Origin: Botryllus schlosseri
Lineage: Eukaryota
Length of the DNA: 64,000 bases
Assembly: GCA_051294905.1 (NCBI GenBank)
Contig: CM119379.1
Span: 20,646,001-20,710,000 of the forward strand
Reading direction: 5' to 3'
The notes beneath the pieces were generated by a model. It made no database searches and had not been told where the DNA came from. It saw only the letters and a list, made by a program, of their open reading frames with translations. A program made the translations under genes and the position numbers. Below are positions 1-21,600 of the stretch, piece by piece (within the stretch, counting starts at the first letter, position 1; each line of letters begins with the position of its first letter).

Positions 1-403
1 AACATCGTGACGCTGATGGTAATCAACGTTTCTCGTCCGTCTTTATCTGATAAGATAGGGGTTCTTAAAGTGGGGTCTGTGAAAGGCAAACATTGAGTAA
101 CAAATATAAACTACGCTACATTGTCCTATATTTATAAGATATGTCCTTATTTTTGACTGCATTGACAGTGACAGGGGTTGGTCTGTATTGTTGACTTTTT
201 TATTCGCTACGTATCTCTTCAACTAGTCAATATCTCAATGAGGCACCATTGGCGAAAGTGATGACCCTATTTTTCTGTTATTTTAGTTATCATGTCGCTT
301 GAATTGATGAGTTAATTTTTGTGGAGAATTTCACAAATTTCGGGGCGATCCACGCGACTACTACTGGGGGTCCGCTCTGAAAAAAGTTCCTTACGGTTTG
401 CAG

Positions 404-625
404 ATGAAGACGGTTGGGAAAAAGTGTCGTCGCGCGGCAAGCAGGGGAAGAAGTCTTTGAAGGATCACGCTGTCGTCGATAATACGAAAACTGTGAAATC
501 TCTGTCTGATCAGACTCTCGCCGACACCGGTAGGTTCGAGCCTCAGGATCAGTCATCACCGACCCAGGCGAATAGAACGGCGAAACAACAGAATTATTCG
601 GGAATCGTCGTTGAACGGTTCATGG
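404..625 (+). CDS. SCAPER: SCAPER exon (DEDGWEKVSSRGK...VERFM), phase 1-1
   Basis: Acceptor tttgcag at 397-403, donor GTGAGT at 626; DGWExV motif. Confidence 0.85.
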
Positions 626-3600
626 GTGAGTTGAAGTTTTGTTCTGCGTACTCGAGTCTCATTGTTACAGGACGCGGTCGGCTGGTCTGTACTGGAGTAC
701 TTTAACGGAGCACTCTAGTAAGTTTTGCCTACTTGGACCAGGGTTGTAATGACTCGAGTCACGACTCATCTCAAGTTTTCGTTGACTCGACTTGAGTCGC
801 GTCATATCATCAATTTGTGTATTGACTCGACTTGTACTCGATTGATTGCGCACGACTCGACCAAGTCGTTTGGCTCGAGGCGTTCGATATGGTTTGTTCA
901 AGTCTCGTATCTCAGGACCGATAATTCAAGAATAGGCGATAGGCCCGTAAACTGTGTTTTGTCTGTTTGAATAATCATGTTTAGAGTGAGAATAGTATAG
1001 GGCGAGGCTTTCGAAATCACCCAAGAGTACTGAACAGTAAATACTATGACTTGGACTCGAGTCTTAACACTATGACTCGGACTCTACCCGTTGCTCCTAG
1101 ACTTGGTGGTGAATTGAAAATGACTCGACTTGGCTCGAGTCAAAACTATAAAAGTTAGATTTACTTATGACTTGGGACCTTGTGACTTGGTTACAACCCT
1201 TACTTGCACTTCTTCAGTAGCAATTATTTTGGAATACTTTTTCTAGTACAGTTTATTCGGCAAAACTGGATCTAGAATTCTTGACTTTCACTTACTTGGA
1301 AGTGCTACTACTACTGTTACTTGCGTGGATATTTACATCATTGCTTCTACTTCTTCTTGAGCGCCGACAATGAGTACTTTGACCATCTCGGATTGTTACC
1401 CACATTAGGTCGTTTCAAGACTGCAACAGCCTTTGTGGGACTTGGCATTTTCTTGAGGCGGTCAAATGTACAACGCCTGCATCGTAGGATGTGCCAGACC
1501 TGACCAGCACCGATTGGCCAATGGTCTTTTCGCTTGACATACCAATACATGGAATGCTTCGCTGTAACACGAGTGCTGCGCAGAAACTAGTTTTGCTTGT
1601 GAATAGTTGTAGAAGTGTCGCGCATAGAACTTTTTATCTCACATTGCGATTTCTTTGCTTTTCGTAGGAATGTACGGCAGCAATCCCTACCCCGTAACCA
1701 GTAAGAGTGCAACTGTCATCAGCAAAGGTATCATCGAAAGACCCGGAACCAGTAAGGGTAAAGACCTCACGCTGCAAACATTGGACGATGTCGAAGCGGA
1801 ATTCTTCAAAGCCGGTATTTGGAGATGCTAGAGATAGGTTTACTGTCGCGTGGTCAAGATTTTTTTTAGATGCATAGTTTCGATATGCGCTTGACCCGTT
1901 TTTGACTCTTCCCGGGCTATGTCGTTTCATTGCTGGGACAAAAAGTACATAACACTTCACCCAAGTTTTGTGTTTTCTTGTGGATAAATCTATCATGTTT
2001 TGGTCTTGTACATAGAAAATTTGCGAGTACAGCAACTCCGATAGTCTTTATCGGCCTTGGAAATCTGACTGATCCCGCTTCTATTGTTAAGATGACGCTG
2101 TCGGGTCCGAAGACGAAGACAACGGCGTCTTGGGATCCATGGACGTAAGTTATTTCAGCGTTACCACTTGAAAATGACCGTATTGTATCGCGTCAGATAT
2201 ACGTGCACGTACGGAAGATATTTACGAAAGTGTTTGTTCTGAACTTGATACATGTCACCTAACGTCCGGACTTGGAGAACTAGAGAATTCTAGCCGTCCT
2301 ATCAGACTATTTAAAATCTCATGCTAATGCAAAAGAACTCAGAATTGATATGAACAAAACTTGATCTTTGTTGTATTTCCGCTACGAATTCAGTAATTCT
2401 ATCCAATTAGAAAAATGGTGTAGCTATAATTCTGATCTAATTTGGAAAAGATGAAAATTTTCTTGTCCAACACGCAACCATCTCATTTTTCAGTCGGATT
2501 CTCAAGCTAATGCGGCGTTGCGGGAGCACGACGCGTCGATAGCGGCCGCGGAACAGGAGGAACAGCAATTGATGAAAGAGATCGAGGCGGAAGAGAACGC
2601 TCCGTGCGACACCGATTCCGAGACGACGATCGACGCGGACATGGTATTTCTTTTCTGCGTTACCCAGTTTGCCGCCGCGATTTTTTGAATTCGCAACAAT
2701 TCGTTCATGGCGGCGTACCTTATGAGGGCTAGTCTGTTTGATTATAGATTTTCACTGCCAATCGCTGGTTGATCATTGACTTTTCTCAGGCGGAGATCTG
2801 CGACATCGGTTGATCACCCCCGCAATTTAAACTAGAGTTTGCTCAGTACTTGAAGGATTCGATTTTGAGTAGGATATCAGGCTTCTAGTTGAGTATTCGA
2901 TGTCACTTGTTATAATTTTGTAAAGAGTATGAATGATGTGGAAATTCCAAACGTACACCTTTTATGCGACTACAAAAAATCGGGCAAGGTCTACACCGCA
3001 TTGAATATGATTTGATATTTTTTCCGGTCATACCTATTTCATTTCGCTCTGTGACAATGTGGAGGGATGATCACGAATTCACAAATATGCCATTTCCGCT
3101 AACAAGCGTAGCTTTGTACGACATTTTTTGTATGGTATGATACAACGACCGAGGTTTCAAGGCTTCCACGGTGGGAAAATAATATCGAAACTGGAATTAT
3201 CGTAGATAAATGAACTCTTAGTTGGAAAGGGGTTTGTAATTTCAGTACTTCAGCCCTAGTACCGACAAAGTCAGACACCTTCATTTGTGTCCAGGCGGGC
3301 TCTTCGAGCGCCAGCATTACTCCGCGGGACAGCCAGGACTGGAACGTGATCATGGCTCGGTTCGAATCCGAGCAGGAGCGACACAAGGGTTTGTCGTGGG
3401 GCGACATAACAGAAGAGGACGAAGTCAGGGAGCCGGGAAGGGCCGTTCAGATGCACGAGAAGCTGTCGTCGCCCTCCAGGAGAAGGTAGATCTTGATGGC
3501 ACGATCATATTCTGCGGCCGTGCTTTTCAACCTTTGGGTTGTACTCATTTGTGCGGATGACAAATGTGGTGTGGATGAAAATTGTGCATATGTTTTACTT

Positions 3601-6600
3601 TATCTGACGTGAAATCATTTAGATAAACCTAACAGAATATTAAATACAGTGGCTCCCTAACCTTTGTCGTTGCGATGCATTTGTAAATACAGTCTCACAG
3701 CAGGAGTGAATTATTATTTGCGCATGAGTATCAAGTAATCATAAATCGGGTTCGAAACCGGGTCTAAAGATCTAGCCATCGAGATACTAGAAGTCCTCTT
3801 ACAAAACCCAACAACTTATTTAATCGAAAAGGGCTTATGTGCACTAATCGACTTCGAAACAAGGAAAAATATTTGTCTTTACGAGACCCTCGATGGCCTA
3901 ATGCGGGGGGGGGGTTTGGAGCCTGAAATTGTGCCTAACTGGTCTGAAATTGCACTTGGTCATTTCATTTTGTGTACTAATTTTCGGTTGGTTTGTGCGC
4001 ATGGAAAAAGTTGAAAAGCACTGTACTATGGTATTATGCAAAGACGGTCAGCAATGAATTATTACTTTTTCTGAGTGCTAAAGAAAGATGTGTATTTACA
4101 CAAGTATTATTTCTGCTTACGTTTTCTGAAGCAAGACCGCTTGCTTTTTTGCGCTTTGAATGGAATCCGTATGCAGCAAGTGATGATAAAAAGGCCGAGT
4201 ATCATCTTCGGAAATGATAACAACACCTACAGCGATATTTATTCTGATGCTGCACGGTAGCTGTATTGCTACCGGTCTTTTTATATGTTTTTTTTTTTGT
4301 TGTGGCAAGTGATGAAAACAGGCCGAGTTTGATCCGCGGATGTGATGCGATCAGCACGAGCGATTCGGATTTTCTGATGCCGTCGTTTGAAATTCGATGG
4401 TATTTGCAAAGGGATAGGTAGTTCTGTCATATTGTGTGCCCGGTGCCTTTTTACACCAGCATTGCCTGTAATACGGAACTAGGCCAAAACAACTTTATCC
4501 TAATCAATGTCCAAAGAGTGAAAGGCTGGTAGTTTTGCCTAGAAGTGGAAGTCTTCTGAAAGTAGGCAAAATCTACTGTACCACCTTGATAAAAGTAGAA
4601 TTACGGTACTTCGTTACTGACCATACCACCTCTGGTTAAGATTCGCTGTAAAACGGCAAATACTCTTTGTTTTAAGCCGTGAAATTCACATTATCAGTTG
4701 TTTATTATTTGGTGGTCTTATTCTCTCACCGAAGGCCGAGGTTGATCAGTAGGCTCTCCAATTTCTTACTCTGGACTTGTTGTTTTTGTAGGACTCCCGC
4801 AGAGTCGAAAAGGAAAATGGAGGAAAAGCAACGTTCAGCCACTTTGCGTCGTCAGAAGATGGTCCGTGATAAGACGGAGAGAATCGGCTACCTGACCGTG
4901 CGCGTGGCCGATGTTAGAAGGCTTAAGGACGATCTCATCATGGGACGGACGGAACTCCTGAAAGAGCTTCATATGGTACTGACTTTGCCCTGGTTTTGAT
5001 TTTGTTGTAGACGTCATCAGTAATGAAGAACTTGCACTTTACCATGGTACTTGGTAGTTTTTACTTGTTTTACTCTAAATCGAATAGTTTTGTTTGTATA
5101 CTACTTCTACTGCGATGTTTTTTGATGCTGCATTAAATTTATCACTCCTTTATCAAGTTCAGCATTTTTTTATTGTCCCTGCCCTAAAATCGGTTATCAG
5201 TAACAAAGTACCTTATACCTTATCCCAGTACTCGAGTAAGTTTTATCCACTTTTTGCACTTACTCCGGTAGTCTTGTTCGTATGTTACAGGGATACTCAA
5301 CTCGGATACAAAAGTTTGAGATTTGGTTAGGTGCATTATAACTGTCGTGAAATAATTTACAGTCAAACAAATTTTTTAAGGTATAATTATATGCAATATA
5401 CGGTACAGTTGTATTCGCAAGACCAATAAGGAAACGTGTTTATTGTTCTGTTAGTCAAATCAATGTCAATGGATTTAGTTTTATTTATAAAAAAAGAAGG
5501 AAATACTGAGACAGATAGACCTTGATCCAACGCTCAAAAGGTCCGCCAGTTGAGTGTCCATGGTATACTGCACTATTTCAACAGTGTTTTGATGCTGAAA
5601 TAAATTCATCGCCCCCTTATCGACATATCTTTACCCCAGGAAAAACTACAGCGCGCTGAGCAGCAGCGCGCCTTGAAACTGATGAAGATCGTTCGCAAGG
5701 CGCAGGCCGAGGAGACCAAGGTCAACGAGATTCTGTTCATCAATGAGCTGCAGGAGCAGAACAAGCGGCACGATGTGCTAAGCAGGATTCTGGAGCACGA
5801 CGCCAGGCTGCAGGAGATCCAGCAGGAGAGGTCGAAGATGTTCGAGGTCAAGGCGGCCAAGGAGGAGAATGCCAAGGTAGTTAAATCAGTGTCACAGTGC
5901 TAGACCGTTTTGGTCATAGGGATTACGACACACTATACCTGGCCACTATGTTGGTCACTGGTCAGGAATGGAATACATCTGCTGTGGTCAGGTCATTTCG
6001 CCCACAAGTTCTCATTGCCGGAAATTCGTTTGCAGGAAAGGCGACGCCTAATCGAAAAGGAGCGGCAAGACCGACTCAGCGAATTGATCAACAAACGCAA
6101 GGAGCACGATTCCAGGATCGAGCAATTGAAGCAAGAGAGAGAAAAGGAGAGGGAGAAGCAGGCCAGAGAAAAAGAAAGGTGAGGTTCGCTGTAGACACTT
6201 TGTCTGGGATCCTGATCCCGGAAATCGTACACCGTGAAAGGATGTATGCGCTTTTTTCAACTGGAATGCAGGCCCTGTAGACAGTAACTTCTGCTAAAAT
6301 GGTGTATGGATGTTGATTTGCGGGCTTTGTTTCAGTTTGTGTTCTTGTCGCGAATTTATGTGCTGTGTTCTGAACGATTCGAGATTTTGGAATACGGCAG
6401 AGCTGGTAAATTGTCCCTGCTTACTCATGCATTGACATCGTCGCAATGTTTGGCAATCGATTCCTATTTATTATGCAGCTTTCATTTTGTACTGCTATTT
6501 CACAGGGATCGTAAAACAAGACTGTCTGCACTTAACGCGGCCCAGCAGGAAGCTGTCGAAGAATTGCAAAAGAAAATCCAGACCAAGGTACGAGAATTAT

Positions 6601-9600
6601 ATCCTGTTCCTTTATCCACCAACGTTTTTTTGGTGTCGGTAGATTGCGCTGATTACCATGGGCCGGTTTCTTCAACGTACAAGCTGTGTGGCAAATGATG
6701 ATATAAAGGCCGATTGTATCTTCGGATATGAAATCAAAAACCTGAAGCGAAATATCCTGATGCCACTTTGTTGTGTTATGTCCTTGACGGGACGTGGTCC
6801 TTAACAAAGTTCATTAGTACTCGCCGATAGGTGGGTTTTTTCAGCGTTAAAGCTGTGTGGCAAATGATGATATAAAGGCCGATTGTATCTTCGGATATGA
6901 AATCAAACACCTGAAGCGAAATATACTGATGCCACTTTACTCTCTTACGCCCTCAACAGGACGCGGTCGTTCACAAGCTTTTTTAGTACTCGCATGACTT
7001 ACTCTAGCTGTAGAACCTGTGTGGCTATGTTTTAAAGTATTATTTGAACAAATAGGTTTTTGAGACAGTGTGGTTATTTTTATATGACTGTCTAATGTGA
7101 GTGTGTGTGATGCAAATTAATTTCTGACATTGCCCGGAAGCGGTTTTGTTACAGGGGCCTCGTGATATTATACTGTTACACTAGGGTTACTTTATTTATA
7201 AGAGGACACTTTTTCAAAATTTTCAGACTTATAATACTGGAGTGAATTCCTGAATGAATGGTAAATTTCTCCCGACCTTGTGGTCGCTTGACTAAATAAA
7301 AGGTCATCTTTGCTGCTTGAATCCGGATTTACCAGCTTTCTATGAGATGTTTCGTTGGTTGACTAAAACAAATGTCATTTTCCTGGCTGAAGTCCCGAAA
7401 AACCCGTCAGTCCGTTACTTGGCCGCTGATTTCCTGTATCGCAGTCCAATTTCCACGTACATTTAACCAGGATTCTCAAAAAAAGAGGACATTGAGTTGT
7501 CCTCCGCGGACACTTTCAAAAAGGACGTATGGTAAACCTATGTTATACTAACACATTTCTAGACGCAGAATATCAGAGATCAGTAATTAGTAGCCTGAAA
7601 TTGTCAAATTTAACCAAGTTTGTTATCTACAGCATGACGAAAGTGAACGGCGTCACCAGGAGCAATTGGAGCAACGGAAAGAAAAAGCTTTGGAGCTGTC
7701 TCTTGGCCGATTTTCTCTGTCGTCAAGCGGCAACATGCAGCCAGGCGATTTACAGAACACCATCTCGGAAGGGGATAAGGCGACTAGGAACAACTCGGCA
7801 AGCGCTCAATTAGATCTGGCATCACTGCAGAGAGAGTAAGTCACTTTTCGTGGTGTTTCTAGCTATAGGAATCCTGTATATGTGGTTTTTTTTGCCAGGG
7901 AGGACCGGGACAATGGTAAAGGCGACGCGACGAGCCTCAATAAATCAATGGTATCCGAAAACACCATTATTTCCCCGCGAAACGTACCTTCTGCGGAAGA
8001 AAAGCGAGTACGTTTTCTAGCGATAGGGGGAATCTATACAGTTACACGAGCGCAACGCCCAGCGGGGGTCCAAGTTTTCATAGTTGATACTCAAGTAGAA
8101 GTAGATGTGACGTCGTAAATTTCTACCCGAGCACGAGTAAAAGTGCAGATTCCTGAGCAAGTGAAAAAGTGGGCATTCTAGGCCTAGTTTAGCCAAAAAT
8201 ACTAAATACGAAAGTACCTGTCACTGACACCATGGATTGTAAAATTGCTGCGTGGCTGCCTTTTTGTCTGTAACTCTGTTACGACTGTGCCGAGACTACT
8301 AACTTTTGTACGGTATGTAGTTTGTAAAGGAGACATGGTTTTCCGATGGATGTTCCATCACTTTTTGGAATGCAATTATCTTGACAACCGATACAGATAG
8401 CCCCTGTATCGTGGCCGCTGAGTATATTTTCGAAAGCTGCACCTGATTACATTGCCGTTTGTCATGTTGCATTACTCGCGGTGACATCTTTTGAGTTAAA
8501 AAGTAGGCAGCCTCAGGCATACTACTAGGAGTATGAACTATTTACTTAATGCATGTCTTTACCCTTACTTTCTTACTCTTTGGAATCGCTACTTCTAATC
8601 TACTCTAATAGTAATTCTGGCTACATTTACTTAGTTCGTGCTTGTGTTCCGTGTTCCCAGTGGCATTCGTTTGCAGCAAGTGATGATAAAAAGGCCGAGT
8701 ATTATCTTCGGATATGGTAACAACACCCATAGCGATATTTATTCTGATGCTGCTCAGTGGCTGTATTGTCGCATTAAGGCTAGCGATCCGATGAGGGTTG
8801 CTGACGTAGGTCTGCACTGTCTCCACTGTATAGATGCGTCTCCCCCGTTTTCAATTTCGGCATTTTGAAGTCTTATGCATGGGGACTGGAGTGGTGATCG
8901 ATGCTCCATTGCTCAGCTGTAACGTGTTACATGTCTACAGCCGGATAATTCTAGTTTTCGAATTGGACTAATCATAGCGGAATCCCGGTAATCCAATGCT
9001 AATCTGATTTGTGAATTATTTCTATGCTCCAATTTTTTTTTGATATAATGTGTGGTTTTCCTGAAAACGCTACAGAAGAACTATATAGTGCGGAACGAGC
9101 CAAGCTTGCTGTGCAGACATTTGCCATTCTCGTGCTTATGAGAGATTTGATATGAACTGAACTTTATTCAATTTCTTAGTTTTCGAGAATTTAGTAATTT
9201 TAATTCCTATCTGATACGGAAAAAACTGTGTAGCTATAATTCTAATTGTAATCCAAAATGAATAAAAACTGTAGCTATCATTCAATTCTAGGCTAATTTG
9301 GGAATAACTGTGTAGCTATATTCCTATTTCTACCGTTATGCTGGAGAATTCCCGAACGCATATAGACTGATGATAAAATGCCCTTGTTCGCACGCGGTGT
9401 TCGGCCTTCAACGTGCTGGTATTGATTTTCGTACACGGCAACACGGCACGGGAAAGGAAAATACCCTGTCAGTCCTTACGAGATTGCGAATCGCTGGATT
9501 AGCGGCGAAATGTTCGAGGTTATTTCCGTCGCCGTAACCATAGGGCGATAAACCCCCCTGAAAAATTTTGTTTGTCACAGGTTTTTCAAGTTTCCATTTA

Positions 9601-12600
9601 TCTCGTTGGTCACAAGTTCATTCGGCGTGTCGGCTTGACAGTTAATGAACTCGACACTTGGTGGTCCCTAATCCTAGTGTAGCCTACCTTGAAACGTCGC
9701 TCTGGCTGTAGCCTATCCCCGAACCTATCCCCAACCCCCAACCCGACCACATTAATACTTACGTACCGAGTGCGCCAGACTTGGCCAATTAGAAGATCAT
9801 CAGCTTTTCCAAATTAGATTAGAATTAACATCACAGCTACAAAGTTTTTTCCCGAATTAGAGTATTATTAGAATTATAACTACACAGTTTTTTCCAAGTT
9901 AGAATTATTGAGTTCGCGAAAACTTCAAGATTGAATCAACTTACGTTCATATCGAATCCTAGTTCTTTCATGAACACGAGAATAGCAAATGTCTGTACAC
10001 AGCAAGCTTGGCCCTTTTCGTGCTGTACAGTTCTGTAGTATTTACAGGAAAACCAGTAATTCGTTTAGAATTAGCATTAACGCATAGAAATATTTCACAA
10101 ATTAGATTATATTTAGATTATCGGCATTTCGCTCTAATCAGTCCAACTACACAACTGGAATGATGTAGTTGTCCCAAGTCGGCAAGTGCCGAATTCACCA
10201 AATGCCGTATATCAGAATTCACGCTCATATTCAGGGTAACATTTAGTTTCGGAAGTATTCATGCAATATAGATGCATCGCTTTCATAATAATATTAATAA
10301 GTATTTATTACATTTCTATTGCCAAATTCATCGAGTGGCGAATTCAACAAGTGCCGTATATCAATTCACGCTCATAATCAGGGAAATGTTCATTTTCCAA
10401 TATTTTTCTACTACATGGATGCATCACTTTCATAATAGCAATAATAGTTATTACATTTCTAATGCCGAATTCACCAAGTGCCGAATTGACTGGTAACTAT
10501 CTCGCGAGACTTGCACAACCACGGTGATACATCAATAGTCGATAGATAACACTCAATAGTGGCCTTGTTGCGTTCGCGAATCTAGCCGAACTCGTGTTTT
10601 CGAAGGCGGCGAAGGAAAAGGAAGCGCAGATAACGGAGAGGAAGAGAGCCATGAAGAAACGCGCGAAGAAGCTGAAGACTAGAATGACGACGAGGTGCGT
10701 TGCTATTGTCACGTCATGCGCGGTAATGCTATGCGTCGCGCGTTATCTGGCGTGATTTTTATCTATGGCGAGGTTTTCCCTGAATACAGTTTTAATTACC
10801 AATGGACTATGGCCGATCTGAATGGCTTGCGGTAGTTCAAATGCTGCTATGTATATTATATCAAGGGAAACGACTTTCTCGGTATTAGCTCCTGCACATG
10901 ATAATCGAGATCCTGCCGTAAAATCCGACACAGACCCGTTCAGCTTCAAACACGCCCGCTTTCAGTTTTGGGAAGATCTATAGGAAACCTTGCTCTGTAC
11001 TTCCTCGAAAACACGAACTAGTACGCTTCTATTCCGCAGAGGCCGCGAGTTTTTGAAAGCGCTGGACGAAAAATCGACTTCGATGTCCGCTTCAAAGAGC
11101 AAGTACGTTTCAATGTCCCGTTTTCTTTAGCCTTCTCGGTGAATCGCGAGCGCCGTGTGTTGCAGGGTGGCGCGTCTCGTGAAGGATATCGGCCGGAAAC
11201 TGACGTCACAGAAGGAGGCCAGCGGCCCGTGGCCCGCGAATCGTGCGGCCGCGCTAGACCGCTCTCTCGGAGAATTGATCAGACTGCTCGAAAAGAAGGT
11301 AGATTTTTATATCGGGTATTACATCACAAACTACAATACAGAGATAGATAATTTTAGTTGTAGTTCTAATTCTACTCTGCTGGCAACACAGCGCTAAACG
11401 CAGCGCGTGCGCGCGATGTGGCAAATGATGATATAAAGGCCGATTGCATCTTCGGATATGATATTACCAAACCGAAGCGAAACAACCTGATGCCGCACTT
11501 TCGCCATTTTAATGTGACAAGTATCACCGCGGTAATGGCTGGCAATGCCGTGTTTCCGAGATCGGTAATTCACGTGTTCTACGAGATATCTGAGCGTCAA
11601 AAGACTTGTGTATGTTCGTGCTGTGCTGATCGTATACTGAAAATAAATGGTTAGATTTCACGGAAACTCATCCTTAGAGTGTACTGGAATCATTCTTTAT
11701 TTATATGCGTGATATGATAGAATGGCGCGCCGTGGCGCCTGTCGAGATTTACCTCTTCCCAGAGGCGGTCAGTGACAAAAGTACTTGAGCCTTTCCGGAT
11801 TGCCGAAGTATGTTTTCCTGCGTGCGCTGCTTCAGGGGTTGTGTTTTAGGCCGCTACCACAGTTTTTGAGCAGAATAACTTACTTTTCGCGATATCGATT
11901 TTGAGAAGTAGAACGCTGTTTTGGGATAAGTCTGCAACACTTCAACGGGAGAAATTATCAAAGGAGCCGCGCGAAATAGCCGGCGGTAACTTGATATATT
12001 TTCAGAAGACTCTACCGATGTTATGTATCCATTAGTCACTTCGCGTCGGTCGCGTGAATACAACTTCGGAAGTAGCCAAGTCTTTTTTAAACTACGTACT
12101 CGGGGCATTTTGAGACCCTTGATATTCTACGTCCACTTGTAGTAGTCTTGACTTGTCTTGAAATTGCAAATTTCGATTGTAATTGAGTAACAATTTACGA
12201 CAGCAACGCTGACTACTTCGACAATGACCGCGTCTTGCGAATTACCGGTATTGCGTTGCATCCGATATCCTGTTATCTATAGACAGCCAAAAACATAAAG
12301 TCCACAGCCCCTATTTTAAATCTACTCTTTGAAACTAGTTACTTACTTCGAGTGGAAATATAAAATGAAATCAACTAGTTTCAAATAGTAGATTTAATGT
12401 AAATTCCTACTAAATTACGTGTAGAAGTAGCAATTTATGACACTTATTTCGAGTGGAAATATAAAATGAAAGTATCATAAATTGCTTCTTCTACTTGTAA
12501 TTTGGTAGGAATTTACGGCTTTACTTCTACTTGTAATTCAGTAGCGACGCTAACTACCCCCTGACGTGGTAGCGCTCACGTATGCGTTTTCCTATTTCGA

Positions 12601-15600
12601 AAGCGGACAGTTATTTCCATTTATCCCGTCCTCGTCAATCATATTTCGCGGCAACTGAAGGCCGCTGAAAAAAAATCGACCTTCGCGGAAGCCTTCTCGC
12701 GGAAATAAATCGTCTTTTAAGCCACGCGTCGAAGGGTATCGGATCCGGCGGTCTATGGTTACAAGCGCGGCGGTGTCGGGCGTTTGCCGGCGGCTTACCG
12801 CGCGAAAGTGAAAAATGCGGGCCGCCTGCCAATTAGCGAGCCCGCGTTATTTGTCTTTCCGAAGCGATTAGCGTAGTAATGAAAAAGCGCCCGCTCTATG
12901 CGTAATCTAGGTAAGATGAAATATTGTTAAATAATGGTCCGCGGTGCTTGTAACGAGTTGCGCGAATGTACGAAGCCGTTAAGGCCTGTAAGCGGAGTAC
13001 CTCATGACGGAGTTCTGATCATTGATCAATCAACTTGATAGTCGTTTGTTTTTAGTGCGTGTCCTTCCGGTAAGCCTCGTTTCAAGATCAAAACGCTACA
13101 TCTGACGACGGGTCTGTTACCAATGCGTTGTGTACGCATTACAATGTATTGGTAACGTTCGAGGGAGTGATTCACGAATATCGCATTGATTATTCCTGAT
13201 GCCGGAATGTGTATACAGATGAGTCTTTAGCCACGCAAAATTACATCATCTAAAAGCCAAGCAAACTATATTGTGAAGTTAGCCTCGTTAACATCCAACC
13301 TAGCTGTGTCTGATAATATTTTGTGATGATAAAATGGCGGTAAAACGGCGTGGAAAGTGACGTAACAGGCGTGCGCAATAACGGAACGCGTTAATAACGC
13401 CAAGCTAGAAGTCGTCGGAATTAATTTCGATTTAAGGTGGTATTATGCTATTATCGATAATATGACTAAATATCATTGACTTTGAAAAAACAACAAGCTA
13501 TTATTTTCATTGAACTTCCGTGAGCCGCTTGAGACCAGTCCACGGCGCCGAATTTACCGAACCTAGCCTCTCGGATGCGGGCGGTGGCGCTGTTAAGCTT
13601 CTTCGAATGAGTCTTGTTACAACAGGTTGGGTATAGCAATAAATTCAAGGTGTTATTGTAAGAGGGTCAGTTACCGATGTAATAAATCTCGTTCTCAACA
13701 TCTCGTCCTTTCGCGGCCTACGTATTCTCGAATTCGTCCTAATTGGATCGCTAACCGTTTTTTTTTCTCATGAGACTCTCCTGGTTGGCCGAAAATATCC
13801 GCTGGAAATAAGTAGCAATTTGCGGTGTGCTAAAGGGTAAGGTGAAGGTCAATACCTATACGCCGCGGCCTTCTTATCTGGCGTATATTAACGCGCAGCG
13901 CGGCCCGATAAAAGCGTCCATACGCGCGGTAGTTGGGTGTTCTCAAATTGCTGATGCTATCATCTTAGGCGCGTATGGTCATACGATACGGCGGCCTGTA
14001 ATTCATAACCTTGACATATCCGCGGTGTTAACTGTTAAGCCATTCTCAGTTTAAAGCAATGGTTTTATGCTACCGGTGTTCTTCTGATTCGGTATCGTGT
14101 TCCATCCGGTATTGAGCACGGCCATCGTCGTTAATGCGGTGTCAAGGCTATTCTTGCATACGCGATTTCGAGGTGACATTGGTTCTGTCGGTGCTGTTTT
14201 TCACTATTTTCCTGTTGATAAGACACGCTACCATCATTCGTAATTACCACGCGTGTATTTACCTGTGATTAGATAATGGAGGCGCGTTTTAAGCCGTAAA
14301 GTTTAGTCAAGTATGAATTTACGTACTGGTTTTTCCGTTTTTGGCATTGCGATTTTGCGATGTTGTTTGGTTAGGTGGCTTGGATTATAGAGTTATACCG
14401 CTCTGCGCACGTGCCGGCCGTACGCTTTCATATTGTCAATAATTTGGTCATCCAGGCCAAACGTAACGGCTGGATGGGCTGGCGATCTATTATCCCGTGC
14501 TTACCAAACACGGTGGACACTATGTTTCACCTTTCGCGCCCGCTGTGTCGGTACGCCACTTGAGTGGACAAGAGGGATTTGTGTTATCGCGATTCGCTTT
14601 GTCGCCAGGCGACGCAGATGTGAATTCAGCGCCGGTATACAAGCTAACCAACCGTTTATCAGCAGTTCAGCACGCCCGACTGCGCTTCGATGTGGGGCAT
14701 AATATAAAACACGGAATTGCAGTCAAACTACGAACAGCTACCCAACGATTCATGGCAAATCACCACCGAATACCGCGATATATTTCCCATTTATAATCCG
14801 GGGCGATAATGGCTCCAAAGCTGGGCAGTTATCGAGATATCGTATTATAGAATCTCAAAATTTTAAATTTTCCCCGATGCGGCTGTGTTCGGATTGGTTA
14901 CTTGTGCGAGGCCTCTTTTCGGGAATTCAATATGGGCTTTTTTATGTATACTGGAGTGATAATTCGGAATCGATAGCACATGGAGTTCAGTAGTTTAGTG
15001 GTTACAACAGCCGATTAGGGATCCGCATTATAAATTGGATGTACTGTTATTCGACGCATAAATCCGAAAAAGCGAACTACGAAATGACATCAACCGTCAA
15101 CGGTAGATATTTGCAACGCCTGCTTACTTGGATTTCTCGACGGCTTTGGCTCCAGAGTCCGTTAATATTATGAGCACGTGGGCTAAAGTTAGGGTTTGGG
15201 TAAGGTTAATTTTGGTGTTAGGGTCACACGCGCGAGTGTTGCATGTCCTACTGTCATTTTTCATTGTGCCGCATGCATAATGTCCTGCAACCCGCTCACA
15301 GACCCAATACCAATGTGGCCCTTGATTTTTGACCTTAAACCGCCGCGGCTCTATTTGTCTCGAGGCTTACGCCTGGCTTTTCATCCCTGGGGCGCGAAAT
15401 TTCTGTCACCCGATCCGACAAGCAAACCCCCTCCTCCCTAATCCAATCCGTCAATAATTAAATCCAGCCCGGCCTTTGTAGGCGTGCGGCGCGCGCGCGG
15501 CCCGACGAAAAATTCACCCCCGCAGGAACCCGCCTAATCAATCGGCAAACACGAAACGAGGTGCCGGAATTCCGCGGATTTGCGCACGTAATTGAGATTA

Positions 15601-18600
15601 TGTCATTTTGTAAACTCCGGCGGGGTCACGGGGGCGGCCGTGAAATCAGATACTGCCAACATCGTGTTCTGTTCGCGATAAACCCCCGGACCCGCTTTTG
15701 GATGTTGTAGGCCCCCACGCGGTATCTGTATGTTGATCTTAACGGGGTTTTCTGTGTAAGCAACCCGCGGTCTGCAACAACAAGGATCATTGTGTGGAAA
15801 ACTATCGTTTTTTAGGGGCTTGCGAGTGTGCTGGTCTTGGAGGGTGGCCGGTAGACGGTGATTTTTGCTAATTAGCTCCGTAGATTCACGATTTGACAGC
15901 GTCTGCCGGCTGTTTTTGGGTGCATTTTACATCTTCATGGACATCAGGTCTCATTTGCTCACTTCCCGAGCTGGAGAATAACGAATTCAGAATGTTGTGT
16001 ATGGAAAATAAAACTATTCGTGATTACAGGGCTGATTTGTCAAATATCAAATCGACCTGAGAAGTCGAACGCTTGGCTTCACCAGACTATTATGTACGCA
16101 AGTTAAGCTATTGTGTGATTGCGAGCAAAATTGACTTTCTGGCCTTACTGCAGCGGCGTGGCCGTATGCGAATAATCATCTATTATTACATTCCAAGATA
16201 ATATGACGACTGCAGTCGTTCCATCCACGGAGGGAAGTTCGTGGTCATGCGTATGGGTACAGGAAAAGCATCTTATACCCTCAACTTTTGGACATGACAG
16301 ATTTCGACTGGTCGAAGACACCCACAAATTTGACCTTTTTTTACGCATAGCTCGAACCGTGACGACTCCTCGAGCCTGCATTCGCGATTATGAGTCTCGC
16401 GTGATTACGGGGTCCGCGTAATCTGATTAAGACAGCTCACGTCCGGAACGCTTACGATCAAATAATGGCCGTCCTATTCTGACATGCGCAGACCGCGATC
16501 GTTCAACATTCAAAGCGGCCACGCGAGCTATTAATACGCGTGGCGAACGCACGGCCGCAGATCAGCGTCTTGTGAAATTACAAAACTAAAATGGATCACC
16601 CCGGCTTACTAAAAAGGTTGTTTGTTAACAATTCTCCGCGTCTAATGCCTGTTTTGCGATAGGCAAAGTATATCGTTAGGAAGATGAATTTCCGCGTAAC
16701 AATAGCCTGCCGCTTTGCGGCCAGCGTAGTCGTCAGATTTTGACTCAACCGCGGCGTCGAGGCCTAATAAGATTAGACACGGGGTGTTACTCGCGGTGGA
16801 ATCATTTTGTCATCATTTATCATCATCACGGACCCAAGTGGAACTAAATGCCCCGATATCGCGGCTAGGCGACCCCTATTTTCGGCTTACGATAACCCGG
16901 CCGGCCTTGATACTTAGCGGGCTAGCCCCGTGTCAAAGTCGAAGTGATCTCGTGCTTCTAAACCTGTCTTATTGCGTGAAGGCTGCGGGTGTAGAAAGCT
17001 TGCGATTTGGTGAACTTGATCGCGGATAATGTGACCACACGCGATAATTCCGGCGCTATCAAGCCGTGGGATGTGATGGGTTCGTCGTTCTCAAACGTGG
17101 TCGCCATTTTGTTTCTCTGCAATTCTTTCAAGTTGGCCGATCAGCTATGGAAGGCTTGGCCGCTTGACGTTTTTTGGGCTTAATGTATGGAATGATGTGA
17201 CCGTTTCGTGTGACATCTCCTACTTACGTACTAACTCGGATTTGCGTAAAACCTTCCCGTTTGTAATCGAGGAGAATAATATTTTACGAACACGATTTAT
17301 GCCGTGTCTATGGCGTGACTTGTAACTAAGTTATACTATGGTGTTGTGTGTTTTCCATTTCCATACTTGATAATCTCTTTCCATACCATAATTAGTGTTT
17401 CCCATACCATATCAACATTCTTCCGTACCGTATTTGATAAATTTCCATACTTTCTTATACTCCCGATGTAATGAATATCATGACACACGGGCGGCCTCGG
17501 ATGTTGACATATTGTACGAGATATACTTGAAATTGAACCAGCCCAGATGTCTAGAAAATTTACAGGAGCCAGTGCTAAAGAGTCTGTCCCGTAAATGCAT
17601 ACGCCACAGTAAATATTGTGATCGCATTTGCTTTAATACTAGTAATTGGAGGTCCGTAGATCATGGTGAAGAGATGCATTATTCCAATTGAACAAATTTC
17701 ACTAATCAGTTTGGTACCGACAAATGTAGTCAAGTATGGAAGTGTGTGATTATATTGTATGCCATATTTGAAATTTGACTCTCCCGTTTCCATATTCGAT
17801 GCCCAAATTTGGTGCCATACCGCACATCCATATCATGTCATGAGGCGTTTCTGACATCCGTTGTTTCATCAAGTAAACTTCGATGAGCAAAATGGCATTG
17901 GAAGTGTCCGGACTGCGCCAATTCCTTATAAATAAGGTAGCCCTGAAGTAATGCCCAACTTTTTACTGCAACCGAGTCCAATTTCTCGAATAAAATCGTT
18001 AATAACATGATAACTAGTCCTGATTGGCTCGATGTTGAAATGTGCGTATTTTGTACACGGTGATCGTATATGTACTGTCCGTTGACTACGAATGCCTTTC
18101 TATATTTGCCAGTAGCATTATACTGCTTATGGCACTAGAAATTTCGAAATATCTAGGCAAGATTTTGGCAGTATCGGTCAGATTTTCGACCTTTACGACT
18201 TCCAAGCGCCAGTTCACACGTACCTGCATTCATGCGTTCCTATTCACATTTCCAAGATTTGGATTTATGACTAGCTGTCAATTTTCGGGCTCAACTTGCA
18301 AGCGAATGTGCAAACAGTTTGTTTGCGTGGCTTTAGCGAGGCGTAATTGTTTTTATTCCCCGGTTTCCGGTCGCGCAATCCGGCTATCGCGGTGGCTCAG
18401 AAGTGACGTAATGCCTTTATTTATCCTCGCTGCGTGGACTTGAAGATATTGTTGACGAAACAAGCCCGGTGCCAGATCTTTTCAAAACATCGACTGGGTG
18501 GCTCATGTGCGAATATAATGAAGCCATTGCCGATCGGGGGTTGATTTACGCTGGTGTACACATATTTTGTTTGATTGCAATCTGTAGATCAGTTTTCCCT

Positions 18601-21600
18601 TGCCTGGCGCTAGATGTTATGTCTGCGTGCTGTGTGATGTAAACGCGCCGTTGTTGTTATACGCGGAGACGTAAGCACTGTACTTAACCATACCGATGCT
18701 GATGTGCTTCAAATGAGATACATTTCTGTATTGGTTTTGGTCTTTCGCAAACGACGCATGGTGGATTGGTGGTGGTGTGGTTCCGAATAGCCAATGTTAA
18801 CGTTTAGGGATCACGTGATTACTCTCGTAATGTAACAATCCCTGTCATCGCAGTATTCAAAATCAAACCAACAGCCAAATAGCCAATTGCAACCTGTTGA
18901 TAAATAGGCTCTAATTAGGGTTAGGGCTCGGCAAAATCGAGTACCTGAGTGATTCGAATCTGAATCACGTATTACCCTTCGAGTCGAGTATCCGAGCATC
19001 ACTCCTTTTGATATCACAACAGAATGTACTAAGTCAAAGTTCAAATATGTACCTTTTATGCCACCACATAGAACAAAATGTTTGTCATCCGTCACATTAA
19101 TTACCGATACTTTGGTGTTTTTTCGACCATACCGATTTCATTGAACTTCTTGACGATGTTGTGGGATGATCATGACTTCGGAAATGTGTTATTTCCAGTA
19201 ACGTTCGTAGCTTGTACTATGTCTCGTATGCTGCGACATGGCCAATCAAGGTTTCAAGTCTTCCGCAGTGGAAAATAGTATCAGAACTATACTTCTCGTT
19301 GGTAAATTAACTTTCAGTTGCGATTAGTGTATAATCTCAGTACTCGAAAAAATCGTCTTTTACTACTCGACTCGAATCATTAAAATTAATGCTCGATTCA
19401 GATTCGAGTACTCGAACCATTGTGCCCAGCCCTAGTTATAATTCGGGTCACCGACAACACGGCCTGCGATCTGAATTGAGATTTTGGAAGAAGACTTAGT
19501 AAAGCATTTTGAAATTATGGATTTGATTTCGGTTTCAAAATATTGCTGTTGTTCAAAGTAGGCTATTCTTCTGTCCCCAACATCACTGTTCCTGGGTAGC
19601 TGAAATGGCAACAGTATTCCATCGAGGGGAAATCAGCTTATATGAATGGGCAAACTTCCCTGACATTTCCGAGATGCTTAAAACGGCTTGGGGCTTCCCC
19701 ACAAGATCAAGCAACGCGAGGTGTACCTTGTCTCGCTAGCCCCAATATCGATTCCTTAGTCCATATAAGGCGTTGGTCAGATATCGTGCGTAGCTCGTAC
19801 TATAAAATAAAAGTGATGATCATGATACTTTTGTTGTATTTGTATTTCTTTAGTAAAATATTATTTCCTTTGTGGTAACTGTGTCGGTCGCCCATTTAGA
19901 GAACGCAGCTCTGTACAGACGTAAAGTTTTAAAAACATGGCTGCTAAACAGTGTGGCCTTGTTTGTCTCAATATTGCGGCCCGCGGCCTCTACGAAATTT
20001 GAAAAGTGGCCCGCGAGCCGTTTTGAGCTGGCTACCCCTGGGTAAGATATTAGGTTTAAGGCCGCCAAGCGCCGAATTCAGGATGACGAATTAACTGGTG
20101 ACCATTTTAAAAATCATCGGTATATTTAATTTGTAACTTTCATGGCTCATTTACCATCGCCGCTCCGTGTGCAGGACCAGGAGGTGAAGAACTCGTTTCG
20201 CGCGTGCGGTGGCTTTGAAACGTTGGAGAAAATTCTGGAGCTTACCCTCAACTCAAACCTCACGAGCTACAAAGGCGAGGCGGTGCCTATACTTCCGGAC
20301 AGGTGAACGCAAAATTCCTATAATAGCCGATGCGATTCCGCGGGGACGCGGGTCTATAACCGCAGACAGGGAGAAAAGCTCTTTCGTATATGAACCTAAC
20401 AAAAATATGTGCATGTAAATACATGGGTGGGAAATGGGTGTGTGTATTCAGCAGAATATCACCATAACGTAATACGCGAATGATGGCGTCCGCAGTTTCC
20501 GGTACCAATTACTGAATTACACCCATTACAATGGGTGAAAACGTGTCAGCTACACCTATCCTTATGGGGATATATCCGATGCGTGCAGTGGCTACTTCTG
20601 TTTGGGTGCGTGCCGCCTTTTTGCGCTTTCTTGGGGTGCTACAGAAGAACAGAACCCCTTGGACATTACTTGCATATGTTTAGTTCGCTGATTTTCACTC
20701 ATTGGAATTGTAGCAAAAATGGATTTGTTGTGTGTTCGTGTTTTATTGGATAATAATCAGTTTCTCAGGAAAAAAACTCTCGATTGATATTTGCGTTCGC
20801 GCGTTTTAAATATCAATTACACACACAGGTCGTACTGCCCATCGTCGGGTCGCGTGCAGATTTCTCTGCCAAAATAGGGGCACGTATCAAAAATGTTTTG
20901 AGAATACCTGCTTTGTCGGTGAGATTAGTCGGCAATATATTCCCTGGTCATATCTTTCGCACAGGGTTGAGCTGTGAATCATCCTTGTCATTTTTCCTTC
21001 AGGACAATCGCGAATGCGGCCGCGGCGTTGAAGACGGCCTGCGAGTTCAGCCACGACAACGTGCTGTACATGTTATACTCGTTTCGATTCACCGTGCTTA
21101 TCGACGTGCTGTCTCTTTTGTTAACGGTAAGCGGACTGTGTTTTGTGGGAATTGCTATTCCATGGGGCGGTACGCACAAACGGTTAATAACGAAGGACTG
21201 CTACTTTTTCGGGTTCTCAAGTACGTTTTTCCTATATGCTGAAGTCTTTAGAGATTGAATTTAGTCATTATAGATTTGAATTTATAGATTACGAACAGAG
21301 ATGACCAGGAACGAAGTACTTCGTCTTTTTCGAGTTATCTAGTAGATTTGGCCTGCTTCACTAGTTATTGAAGTTCTCGGGTTTTAAACTACTTATACGT
21401 CCACAGTTTCTGTGCTGAACTACTTTTTACAATCCGAGTTGTTATGTTTCTAGACAAGCTCCACTACTATTCCACCGTTTTCAGGCAAAACTACTTCCTA
21501 TTTACACCTGAGATCTTGTAAAGTAGAGAGTAGTTTTGGGATAAGTTTTATCACTTCCATAAGTAGAATACAGAATCTCGTAATACTTTTTCCGAAGCTT

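What the first reader, a model, noticed from the sequence alone, without database searches (positions are those of the whole stretch)
6705..6750. Split, compensating antisense: two separate segments tile U2 nt 1-18, with a movable junction
Seen: in copies 3, 4 and 6, AAAGGCCGA pairs U2 9-17 and GAAGCGA pairs U2 2-8, giving gap-free coverage of 16 nt. In copies 1 and 5, AAAAGGCCGAG pairs 8-18 and AGCGAU pairs 1-6; copy 2 pairs 8-15 and 1-7. The G that pairs U2 C8 therefore sits in segment 1 in one subfamily and in segment 2 in the other. Segment 2 lies outside the +5 position of box D, so it cannot guide methylation by the normal rule. Inference: it is an auxiliary pairing element that helps open U2 stem-loop I or clamps the 5' end, which pairs with U6 in helix II. 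A chaperone role for U2 is possible.
Basis: partly seen in the sequence, partly recalled or inferred. Interest (0 to 1): 0.82.

Follow-up and report, generated by a model that had tools for sequence, protein, structure and literature searches.

The report
Accessory U2-pairing element in SNORD89-like RNAs
Six small intronic guide RNAs in a sea-squirt gene carry, besides the known guide for methylating U2 spliceosomal RNA, a second conserved stretch that pairs with the very first bases of U2; this is a new example of a known kind of helper pairing, shared from sea squirts to humans.

Summary
Six + strand box C/D RNAs lie in introns of a tunicate SCAPER gene. Each has a first segment just after box C that is antisense to U2 nt 8/9-15/18. 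Each also has a second segment, 27-31 nt further on and 5-9 nt before box D, that is antisense to U2 nt 1/2-6/8.

The family is the short tunicate counterpart of vertebrate SNORD89, the published guide for U2 Gm12 (and Gm11). It stays below Rfam's threshold.

Its core AGCGA is invariant in all six copies and in three copies in Styela clava SCAPER, whose interiors are otherwise unalignable. In two of the Styela copies the two segments tile U2 1-18 without a gap. The Rfam SNORD89 consensus and a printed human SNORD89 carry the same CCUGAAGCGAA block.

Its distance to box D varies, so it is not a canonical guide. It fits the known class of "extra base-pairing / accessory guide" (van Nues 2011; van Nues and Watkins 2016).

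The likely mechanism is a toehold on the single-stranded U2 leader that helps segment 1 invade stem-loop I. The "movable junction" is real but rests on a single lineage event. It may be a by-product of a one-base register shift from G12 to G11. Verdict: new member of a known kind, moderate interest.

The parts
4172..4255 (+). Copy c1, box C/D RNA. C box 4180-4186. Segment 1 AAAAGGCCGAG at 4189-4199 (U2 8-18). Segment 2 AGCGAT at 4231-4236 (U2 1-6). D box 4244-4247.
   Evidence: covariance model 90.5 bits
4301..4385 (+). Copy c2. C box 4309-4315. Segment 1 AGGCCGAG at 4320-4327 (U2 8-15). Segment 2 (G)AGCGAT at 4358-4364 (U2 1-6 plus G.U at U7). D box 4374-4377. Internal loop CGCG instead of TTCG.
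   Evidence: 70 bits
6687..6768 (+). Copy c3, the copy of the finding. C box 6695-6701. Segment 1 AAAGGCCGA at 6705-6713 (U2 9-17). Degenerate D' TTGT/TGTA. Mini-hairpin ATC-TTCG-GAT. C'-like TGAAAT. Segment 2 GAAGCGA at 6744-6750 (U2 2-8). D box 6757-6760.
   Evidence: 97.2 bits; RNA-seq reads over 6612-6925
6856..6937 (+). Copy c4, tandem duplicate of c3 in the same intron. Segment 1 at 6874-6882, segment 2 at 6913-6919, D box 6926-6929.
8672..8755 (+). Copy c5, of the c1 type. Segment 1 at 8689-8699 (U2 8-18), segment 2 at 8731-8736 (U2 1-6), D box 8744-8747.
11417..11498 (+). Copy c6, of the c3 type, with D' TTGC as in mammals. Segment 1 at 11435-11443, segment 2 at 11474-11480, D box 11487-11490. 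Best Rfam match is SNORD89, 21.3 bits (gathering score 41).
4790..8008 (+). Host-gene exons of SCAPER that flank the copies: 4790-4974, 5639-5874, 6034-6176, 6504-6585, 7631-7835, 7899-8008+.
   Evidence: GT..AG joints in RNA contigs; SCAPER identity

Best explanation
The six RNAs are intron-encoded box C/D guide RNAs. They are the short tunicate equivalent of vertebrate SNORD89.

Segment 1 lies between box C and a degenerate D' box. It is the methylation guide for U2 G12, and possibly G11 in one subfamily.

Segment 2 lies in the otherwise unused box-D spacer. It is an accessory guide, or 'extra base-pairing' element. It pairs with the single-stranded 5' leader of U2 (core AGCGA with U2 nt 2-6). 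The U2 strand then runs on directly into the segment 1 duplex. The D'-C' module is looped out on the guide-RNA side.

Inferred mechanism. Segment 2 binds first and at no cost, as a toehold. This raises the local concentration and the net affinity, so that segment 1 can invade U2 stem-loop I, which contains G11 and G12. It also holds the substrate in register next to a weak D' box. The expected result is more efficient, and perhaps dual-site, 2'-O-methylation.

What is shown: the sequence complementarity, the conservation and the energetics.
What is inferred: pairing in vivo and an effect on methylation.
For: Anatomy of a real box C/D RNA:
- C box, D box and a terminal stem with three pairs that keep pairing through compensatory changes.
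- Sense-strand intronic position in SCAPER.
- RNA-seq reads over c3/c4, while the neighbouring intron bins are empty.

Identity of segment 1:
- Rfam's SNORD89 consensus reads AAAAGGCCGAAUUGC after box C, and c6 aligns to it.
- SNORD89 guides U2 Gm12 in a yeast test (PMC6984369).
- Its knock-down lowers Gm11 and Gm12, through a D' box UUGC (PMC11863803).
- A chicken orthologue was assigned to U2-G12 in 2009.

Conservation of segment 2:
- AGCGA is invariant in all six copies inside a variable spacer.
- Styela clava SCAPER holds three copies with GAAGCGAU, which pairs U2 1-8. In two of them it abuts AAAAGGCCGA (U2 9-18), giving 18 nt without a gap. Their interiors are otherwise unrelated.
- Shuffle P is 0.0001-0.0002 in Styela and 0.004-0.013 in the window copies.
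- The Rfam SNORD89 consensus has cugaAGCGaac before box D.
- The human sequence printed in PMC9256700 has CCTGAAGCGAA, identical over 11 nt to c3/c4.

Not a canonical guide: the distance to box D is 5-9 nt in tunicates and 9 nt in human, and positions 1-6 upstream of D are not conserved.

No conserved intramolecular partner.

Energetics:
- U2 nt 1-6 are unpaired and stem-loop I spans nt 7-26.
- With the boxes removed, net binding is -12 to -14 kcal/mol for six of the nine copies (c1, c3, c4, c5, St1, St2). It falls to -5 to -8 when AGCGA is complemented. Segment 2 alone gives -6 to -8 without opening the stem.
- In full-length cofolds the two-segment pairing is the minimum-energy structure for c1-c5. 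It vanishes when segment 2 is mutated.

Precedent:
- Conserved extra base-pairing of 4-11 bp next to the target site, often in the second guide region of single-guide snoRNAs and not adjacent to D/D', stimulates methylation up to five-fold (PMC3116282).
- With an unusual D' box, it is needed for methylating two adjacent nucleotides in snR13 (PMC5389607).
Against: - No experiment or crosslink data for segment 2 was available here. Pairing in vivo is inferred.
- The U2 sequence of this organism was not seen; the mammalian 5' end was used.
- The energy model treats naked RNA, not the snoRNP. Crystal-structure work cited in PMC8162545 suggests that only about 10 bp fit in one guide channel, so the geometry of a second helix is unproven.
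- c2 and c6 do not show the energetic benefit in the simple model.
- c1 and c5 have only 6 nt of segment 2 and leave U7 unpaired.
- Conservation of a U2-complementary word could in principle reflect common descent from one continuous antisense sequence rather than present function.
- Rfam's SNORD89 structure pairs part of this element within the vertebrate RNA.
Confidence: 0.65

Rival explanations
1. Segment 2 is conserved for a reason other than pairing with U2. Candidates are a protein-binding or Cajal-body targeting element, an intramolecular helix of the guide RNA, or recognition of some other RNA that carries UCGCU(UC).
For: - Rfam's consensus structure for vertebrate SNORD89 pairs 'cuga' and part of AGCG with an upstream strand.
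- In c6, CCGAAG is a perfect complement of the RNA's own CUUCGG. In c3/c4, CCUGAAG pairs with the same stretch with one bulge (read from the sequences).
- Isolated 5-6-mers complementary to U2 occur by chance.
Against: - RNAalifold finds no conserved partner for it across the tunicate copies.
- The self-complement is absent from c1, c2, c5 and Styela.
- The conserved word is complementary to the U2 bases that directly abut the guide footprint. The probability of that for an arbitrary conserved 5-8-mer is about 1e-2 to 1e-4.
- Positions next to box D are not conserved, so there is no canonical second target.
Confidence: 0.15
2. The main role of the two-segment pairing is not methylation. The RNP would act as a clamp or chaperone for the U2 5' end. 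It would hold stem-loop I open or mask the helix II strand during snRNP maturation.
For: - 16-18 nt of gap-free coverage of the whole U2 5' end is more than a methylation guide needs.
- A Styela copy keeps segment 2 intact while segment 1 has decayed to 6 nt.
- NOLC1 chimeras of SNORD89 map throughout U2 (PMC11863803).
Against: - SNORD89 loss directly lowers Gm11/Gm12.
- The guide works in yeast on a U2 fragment.
- Accessory guides are already known to act through methylation efficiency.
- Nothing here tests a methylation-independent effect.
Confidence: 0.1
3. Segment 2 is a neutral relic or a chance match without present function.
For: - Per-copy shuffle P is only 0.004-0.013 in the window.
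- The copies are paralogues, so they are not independent.
Against: - It is invariant while its flanks have diverged.
- It is retained in Styela copies with unrelated interiors, and in vertebrates.
Confidence: 0.07

Closest known systems
Vertebrate SNORD89 (HBII-289; Rfam RF00578), guide for U2 Gm12/Gm11
   Same: - Box C followed by (A)AAAGGCCGA, antisense to U2 9-18.
- A degenerate D' box of the UUGC type; c6 has UUGC exactly.
- The block CCUGAAGCGAA in the box-D spacer.
- Intronic location.

   Different: - About 80 nt long instead of about 114 nt, without the long internal hairpin.
- One base fewer between guide and UUGY in c3/c4/c6.
- Hosted in SCAPER in several copies; the human gene is single and lies at 2q11.2.
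- Best score 21.3 bits against a gathering score of 41. The one Styela copy tested does not hit the model at all.
Extra base-pairing / accessory guides of box C/D snoRNAs (van Nues et al. 2011; van Nues and Watkins 2016; e.g. yeast snR75, snR13, human U16)
   Same: - A conserved element that is neither a box nor a guide.
- 5-8 nt, within the published range of 4-11 bp.
- Complementary to the target right next to the guide duplex.
- Placed in the second guide region of a single-guide RNA, and not in register with box D.
- In snR13 it is combined with an unusual D' box and methylation of two adjacent nucleotides, as reported for SNORD89 at G11/G12.

   Different: - The target is a spliceosomal snRNA, not rRNA.
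- The accessory pairing reaches the very first nucleotide of the target, next to the cap.
- The guide has to displace a stable target hairpin.
- SNORD89 was not among the RNAs listed in those papers.
Auxiliary antisense elements proposed for vertebrate SNORD53, SNORD92 and Xenopus tropicalis SNORD88 (Deryusheva, Talross and Gall 2021)
   Same: The idea that a second antisense element helps the modification made by another element, or lets the substrate slide between registers.
   Different: SNORD89 is not mentioned there. No U2 5' end example is given.

Membership tests
Box C/D snoRNA/scaRNA | C box RUGAUGA near the 5' end and D box CUGA near the 3' end | tested here: met
   All six copies; coordinates, scan
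Box C/D snoRNA/scaRNA | Terminal stem that brings C and D together | tested here: met
   6-bp stem; 3 pairs with changes on both sides that keep pairing
Box C/D snoRNA/scaRNA | Made as a stable RNA from the sense strand of a host intron | tested here: inconclusive
   Sense-strand intronic position is shown by spliced RNA contigs. RNA-seq reads cover c3/c4, and an RNA-library contig spans c1-c2, while nearby intron bins are empty. Precise ends and small-RNA libraries were not examined.
Box C/D snoRNA/scaRNA | Bound by fibrillarin, Nop56, Nop58 and Snu13 | not testable with these tools
   -
SNORD89 (RF00578) | Reaches the family's curated covariance-model score | tested here: not met
   No hit at gathering score. 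Best is c6 with 21.3 bits against 41. The one Styela copy tested (St1) gives no SNORD89 hit at E up to 10.
SNORD89 (RF00578) | D'-side guide AAAAGGCCGA that places U2 G12 five bases from a degenerate D' box | tested here: met
   The guide is identical. The register fits G12 if D' is read as UGUA/UGCA in c3/c4/c6. c1/c2/c5 have CCGAG, and the five-base rule then gives G12 or G11, depending on where D' is read.
SNORD89 (RF00578) | Conserved 3' element (C)CUGAAGCGAA in the D spacer | tested here: met
   Rfam consensus, human sequence, c3/c4/c6 and Styela. Only AGCGAU is kept in c1/c2/c5.
SNORD89 (RF00578) | Actually directs Gm12/Gm11 in U2 | not testable with these tools
   Published for vertebrate SNORD89 only
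Accessory guide / extra base-pairing element | A conserved element outside the boxes and the methylation guide | tested here: met
   AGCGA is invariant in 9 tunicate copies and in the vertebrate consensus, while the flanks vary
Accessory guide / extra base-pairing element | Complementary to the target immediately beside the guide duplex | tested here: met
   The footprints abut, or leave one base (U7), on U2 1-18
Accessory guide / extra base-pairing element | Not positioned to guide methylation itself | tested here: met
   5-9 nt from box D at variable register. The fifth base upstream of D faces no U2 nucleotide.
Accessory guide / extra base-pairing element | Its pairing stimulates methylation at the neighbouring site | not testable with these tools
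   Only a naked-RNA energy model: about 6-8 kcal/mol of added net binding

The most novel reading that the evidence does not exclude
The two-segment design may be more than an efficiency aid. Two readings remain open.

1. It sets the register. A one-base insertion (G) at the 3' end of segment 1, together with loss of the matching G in segment 2, would have split the tunicate family into a G12-guiding type (c3/c4/c6) and a G11-guiding type (c1/c2/c5). The accessory helix would act as the fixed anchor against which the guide slides. In mammals the same design would then explain how a single SNORD89 serves both G11 and G12.

2. A stronger version: the RNP also works as a methylation-independent clamp on the U2 5' end during snRNP maturation.
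Probability: 0.2. Interest if true: 0.7.

Novelty: new member of a known kind. Interest (0 to 1): 0.45.

Why it matters
Gm12 of U2 is needed for splicing in vitro. SNORD89 loss changes exon inclusion. How a guide with a very poor D' box reaches two adjacent bases buried in U2 stem-loop I is unexplained.

A conserved accessory helix on the free 5' leader gives a concrete mechanism that is cheap to test. It also explains the so far unassigned conserved 3' element of SNORD89.

It extends the accessory-guide principle from rRNA to a spliceosomal snRNA. It also gives tunicate genomes an annotation that Rfam misses.

Tried and rejected
- Rfam at gathering scores: no family in the window.
- One scan of JGI metagenome contigs with a C box/segment 1/D box pattern: 46 hits. 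On inspection all looked bacterial or chance, and no relative was found.
- A close relative's DNA run (organism B) was about 99% identical over c1-c3, so it carried no comparative information.
- SCAPER loci of Clavelina, an amphioxus, Nematostella and one further animal hold no copy, by regex or by covariance model. SCAPER hosting is therefore not general.
- Ciona and Phallusia SCAPER loci could not be fetched.
- Supplements of the two key SNORD89 papers are not held. I could not see whether a figure already draws the second pairing. The searchable text of four SNORD89 and accessory-guide papers does not mention it.
- Segment 2 as a canonical box-D guide, including for cap-proximal Am1/Um2: rejected, because its register to box D varies from 5 to 9 nt.
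- A third U2-complementary word (AUCUU to U2 23-27; UUGAUC in c2): judged to be chance, because the words are short and the topology is wrong.
- A conserved intramolecular partner for segment 2: not found.
Full report
**What is there.**
A scan of the window for box C/D anatomy found six + strand candidates that share one design. The scan looked for RTGATGA, then CTGA 40-140 nt on, and a terminal stem. The copies are:
- c1 4172-4255
- c2 4301-4385
- c3 6687-6768
- c4 6856-6937
- c5 8672-8755
- c6 11417-11498

A covariance model built from them finds no seventh copy in the 64 kb. The terminal stem keeps pairing through compensatory changes at three of its six pairs.

Spliced RNA contigs define + strand exons at 4790-4974, 5639-5874, 6034-6176, 6504-6585, 7631-7835 and 7899 onward. 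All copies therefore lie in introns, in the sense orientation.

RNA-seq reads cover c3/c4, and one RNA-library contig spans c1-c2, while the adjoining intron bins are empty. This is modest evidence for stable RNAs.

The host is SCAPER. The nearest proteins are from ascidians. The exons are 77-95% identical to those of Styela clava, apart from a weaker match for exon 7899. The organism is therefore a tunicate.

**The observation.**
The mammalian U2 5' end served as reference (printed in bioRxiv 10.1101/2021.08.01.454689).

| Copies | Segment 1 | U2 nt | Segment 2 | U2 nt |
|---|---|---|---|---|
| c3, c4, c6 | AAAGGCCGA | 9-17 | GAAGCGA | 2-8 |
| c1, c5 | AAAAGGCCGAG | 8-18 | AGCGAU | 1-6 |
| c2 | AGGCCGAG | 8-15 | AGCGAU (plus G.U at U7) | 1-6 |

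Coordinates 6705-6750 run from the start of segment 1 to the end of segment 2 of c3.

Segment 2 ends 6-9 nt before box D. The fifth base upstream of D therefore faces no U2 nucleotide.

Shuffles of each interior give P = 0.004-0.013 for a match of that length to the part of U2 left free by segment 1. Short 5-6-mers against U2 do turn up by chance, so this alone is not decisive.

**What the family is.**
Rfam reports nothing at gathering scores. In E-value mode the best match of c6 is SNORD89, at 21.3 bits against a gathering score of 41.

The alignment is informative because it prints the vertebrate consensus. After box C it reads AAAAGGCCGAAUUGC. Before box D it reads cugaAGCGaac...CUGA.

The literature on SNORD89:
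- It was an orphan. A chicken orthologue was assigned to U2-G12 in 2009 (PMC2653536).
- It was shown to guide U2 Gm12 in a yeast assay (PMC6984369).
- Its knock-down lowers both Gm11 and Gm12. The guide is attributed to a degenerate D' box UUGC (PMC11863803).

c6 has CCGA-UUGC and c3/c4 have CCGA-UUGU. Segment 1 is thus the known methylation guide. The tunicate RNAs are short SNORD89-like guides that fail the formal Rfam membership test.

**Is segment 2 conserved?**

Within the window, AGCGA is the only invariant block in an otherwise variable spacer.

I fetched SCAPER loci of other animals. Styela clava (L048) has three + strand copies: 16634-16714, 18746-18826 and a weaker one at 13529-13607.
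- Their D'-C' interiors cannot be aligned with the window copies. They lack the ATC-TTCG-GAT mini-hairpin.
- All three nevertheless carry GAAGCGAU, five bases before box D.
- In the first two copies, AAAAGGCCGA plus GAAGCGAU tile U2 1-18 without a gap. Shuffle P is 0.0001.
- In the third copy, segment 1 has decayed to AGGCCG while segment 2 is intact.

The copies sit in different SCAPER introns in the two species. The family therefore turns over within the host gene while keeping both segments.

The human SNORD89 sequence printed in PMC9256700 has AAAAGGCCGA-A-TTGC, and CCTGAAGCGAA nine bases before CTGA. That 11-nt block is identical to c3/c4, and it again gives gap-free coverage of U2 2-18.

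Segment 2 is therefore conserved from tunicates to mammals. The hypothesis survives its own test.

SCAPER loci of Clavelina, an amphioxus, Nematostella and one more animal have no copy.

**Why it is not a second methylation guide.**
- Its distance to box D is 5 nt in Styela, 6 in c3/c4/c6, 7 in c1/c5, 9 in c2 and 9 in human.
- The bases next to box D are not conserved.
- No conserved intramolecular partner appears in RNAalifold.
- c6, and c3/c4 with one bulge, could pair CC(U)GAAG with their own CUUCGG. This is absent from the other copies.

**How it probably works.**
The published U2 structure and ViennaRNA agree on two points. U2 nt 1-6 are single-stranded. Nt 7-26 form stem-loop I, which contains G11 and G12 and is worth -8.2 kcal/mol.

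The invariant core of segment 2 pairs exactly with the free leader, nt 2-6.

In cofolds of full-length copies with U2 1-30, the two-segment pairing is the minimum-energy state for c1-c5. The D'-C' part is looped out. Complementing AGCGA abolishes binding.

With boxes and terminal stem removed, to mimic protein-bound boxes:
- Net binding is -12 to -14 kcal/mol for six of the nine copies.
- It is -5 to -8 without the segment 2 core.
- It is -6 to -8 for segment 2 alone, with the stem-loop still closed.

This fits a toehold. The leader is captured first, and segment 1 then invades the stem.

All this is a naked-RNA model. c2 and c6 behave less cleanly. The geometry inside the snoRNP is not established.

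**Comparison with what is known.**
Conserved 'extra base-pairing' next to the methylation site was described for 24 yeast and 18 human snoRNAs (PMC3116282). Its features there are:
- length of 4-11 bp;
- often placed in the second guide region of single-guide snoRNAs;
- not adjacent to D/D';
- stimulates methylation up to five-fold.

In snR13, an unusual D' box together with the accessory guide is required to methylate two adjacent nucleotides (PMC5389607). This is a close parallel to SNORD89 with its UUGC D' box and the G11/G12 pair.

Deryusheva et al. 2021 mention auxiliary antisense elements for other vertebrate snoRNAs, but not for SNORD89.

I found no text that assigns the SNORD89 3' element to the U2 leader. 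Figures and supplements could not be checked.

The finding is therefore a new member of a known kind. Three points are new relative to what I could find in the searchable literature:
- the target is an snRNA;
- the pairing reaches nucleotide 1;
- the guide must open a target hairpin.

**The 'movable junction'.**
The state with CCGA in segment 1 and GAAGCGA in segment 2 is shared by c3/c4/c6, Styela and vertebrates. It is probably ancestral.

c1, c2 and c5 form one derived group. They share G in the C box purine position, CCGAG and AGCGAU. In this group segment 1 gained a G that pairs C8, and segment 2 lost its G and A.

That is one evolutionary event. Compensation is therefore plausible but not demonstrable statistically.

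An alternative links it to another note of this scan (s1-236818). Suppose D' is read as the four bases just before UCUUCGG: UGUA, UGCA, AUCA, AUUA, UUGA. The five-base rule then gives G12 for c3/c4/c6 and G11 for c1/c2/c5. The inserted G would be a register shift that happens to pair with C8, and the redundant G of segment 2 then drifted. This is inference only.

**Verdict.**
The interpretation as an auxiliary pairing element is supported by comparative and thermodynamic evidence. A chaperone role beyond methylation is untested.

Earlier notes of this scan on the same window (s1-236785, s1-236818) describe the family and the indel. A follow-up report that overlaps this stretch exists but was withheld.

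Noticed in passing
window 4189-4203, 6705-6720, 8689-8703, 11435-11450: The two subfamilies differ by one base between the guide and the internal TCTTCGG anchor (CCGAG-T-ATCA against CCGA-T-TGTA). Read with a common anchor, the five-base rule gives U2 G11 for c1/c2/c5 and G12 for c3/c4/c6. This may be subfunctionalisation of paralogues.
   Followed up: partly
window 6718-6727 and the equivalent places in c1, c4, c5, c6; 4332-4341 in c2: A conserved mini-hairpin ATC-TTCG-GAT (loop CGCG in c2) lies between the degenerate D' box and a C'-like TGAxxx. It is absent from the Styela copies, whose interiors are unrelated.
   Followed up: partly
window 11470-11477 against 11452-11457 (c6); 6741-6747 against 6721-6726 (c3): In c6, CCGAAG is a perfect complement of the RNA's own CTTCGG. 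In c3/c4, CCTGAAG pairs with it with one bulge. This could mask segment 2 within the RNA. It is not conserved in the other copies.
   Followed up: partly
L048:13529-13607 (Styela clava SCAPER): A third Styela copy has a decayed segment 1 (AGGCCG only) but an intact GAAGCGAT. It lies in an intron that splits what is a single exon (5639-5874) in the window.
   Followed up: partly
window 4172-4385 and 6687-6937: Two guide RNA copies share one intron, twice. c3/c4 is a tandem duplication with a period of 169 bp. The copies occupy different SCAPER introns than in Styela, which indicates turnover within the host gene.
   Followed up: partly
window 7083-7553 and 8025-8181: These stretches of the SCAPER introns are high-copy repeats. 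Summed contig depth is 100-3000, with many loose ends and variants in every run.
   Followed up: no
window 6739, 6786, 6826-6849: RNA-seq reads over c3/c4 carry consistent differences (6739 A>C makes c3 look like c4). This points to an allele or a further near-identical copy elsewhere in the genome.
   Followed up: no
Rfam RF01420 snoR113 consensus: A plant snoRNA family has the same AAAAAGGCCG just after box C. A U2 G12-type guide may be far older than chordates. Its 3' half was not visible in the output.
   Followed up: no
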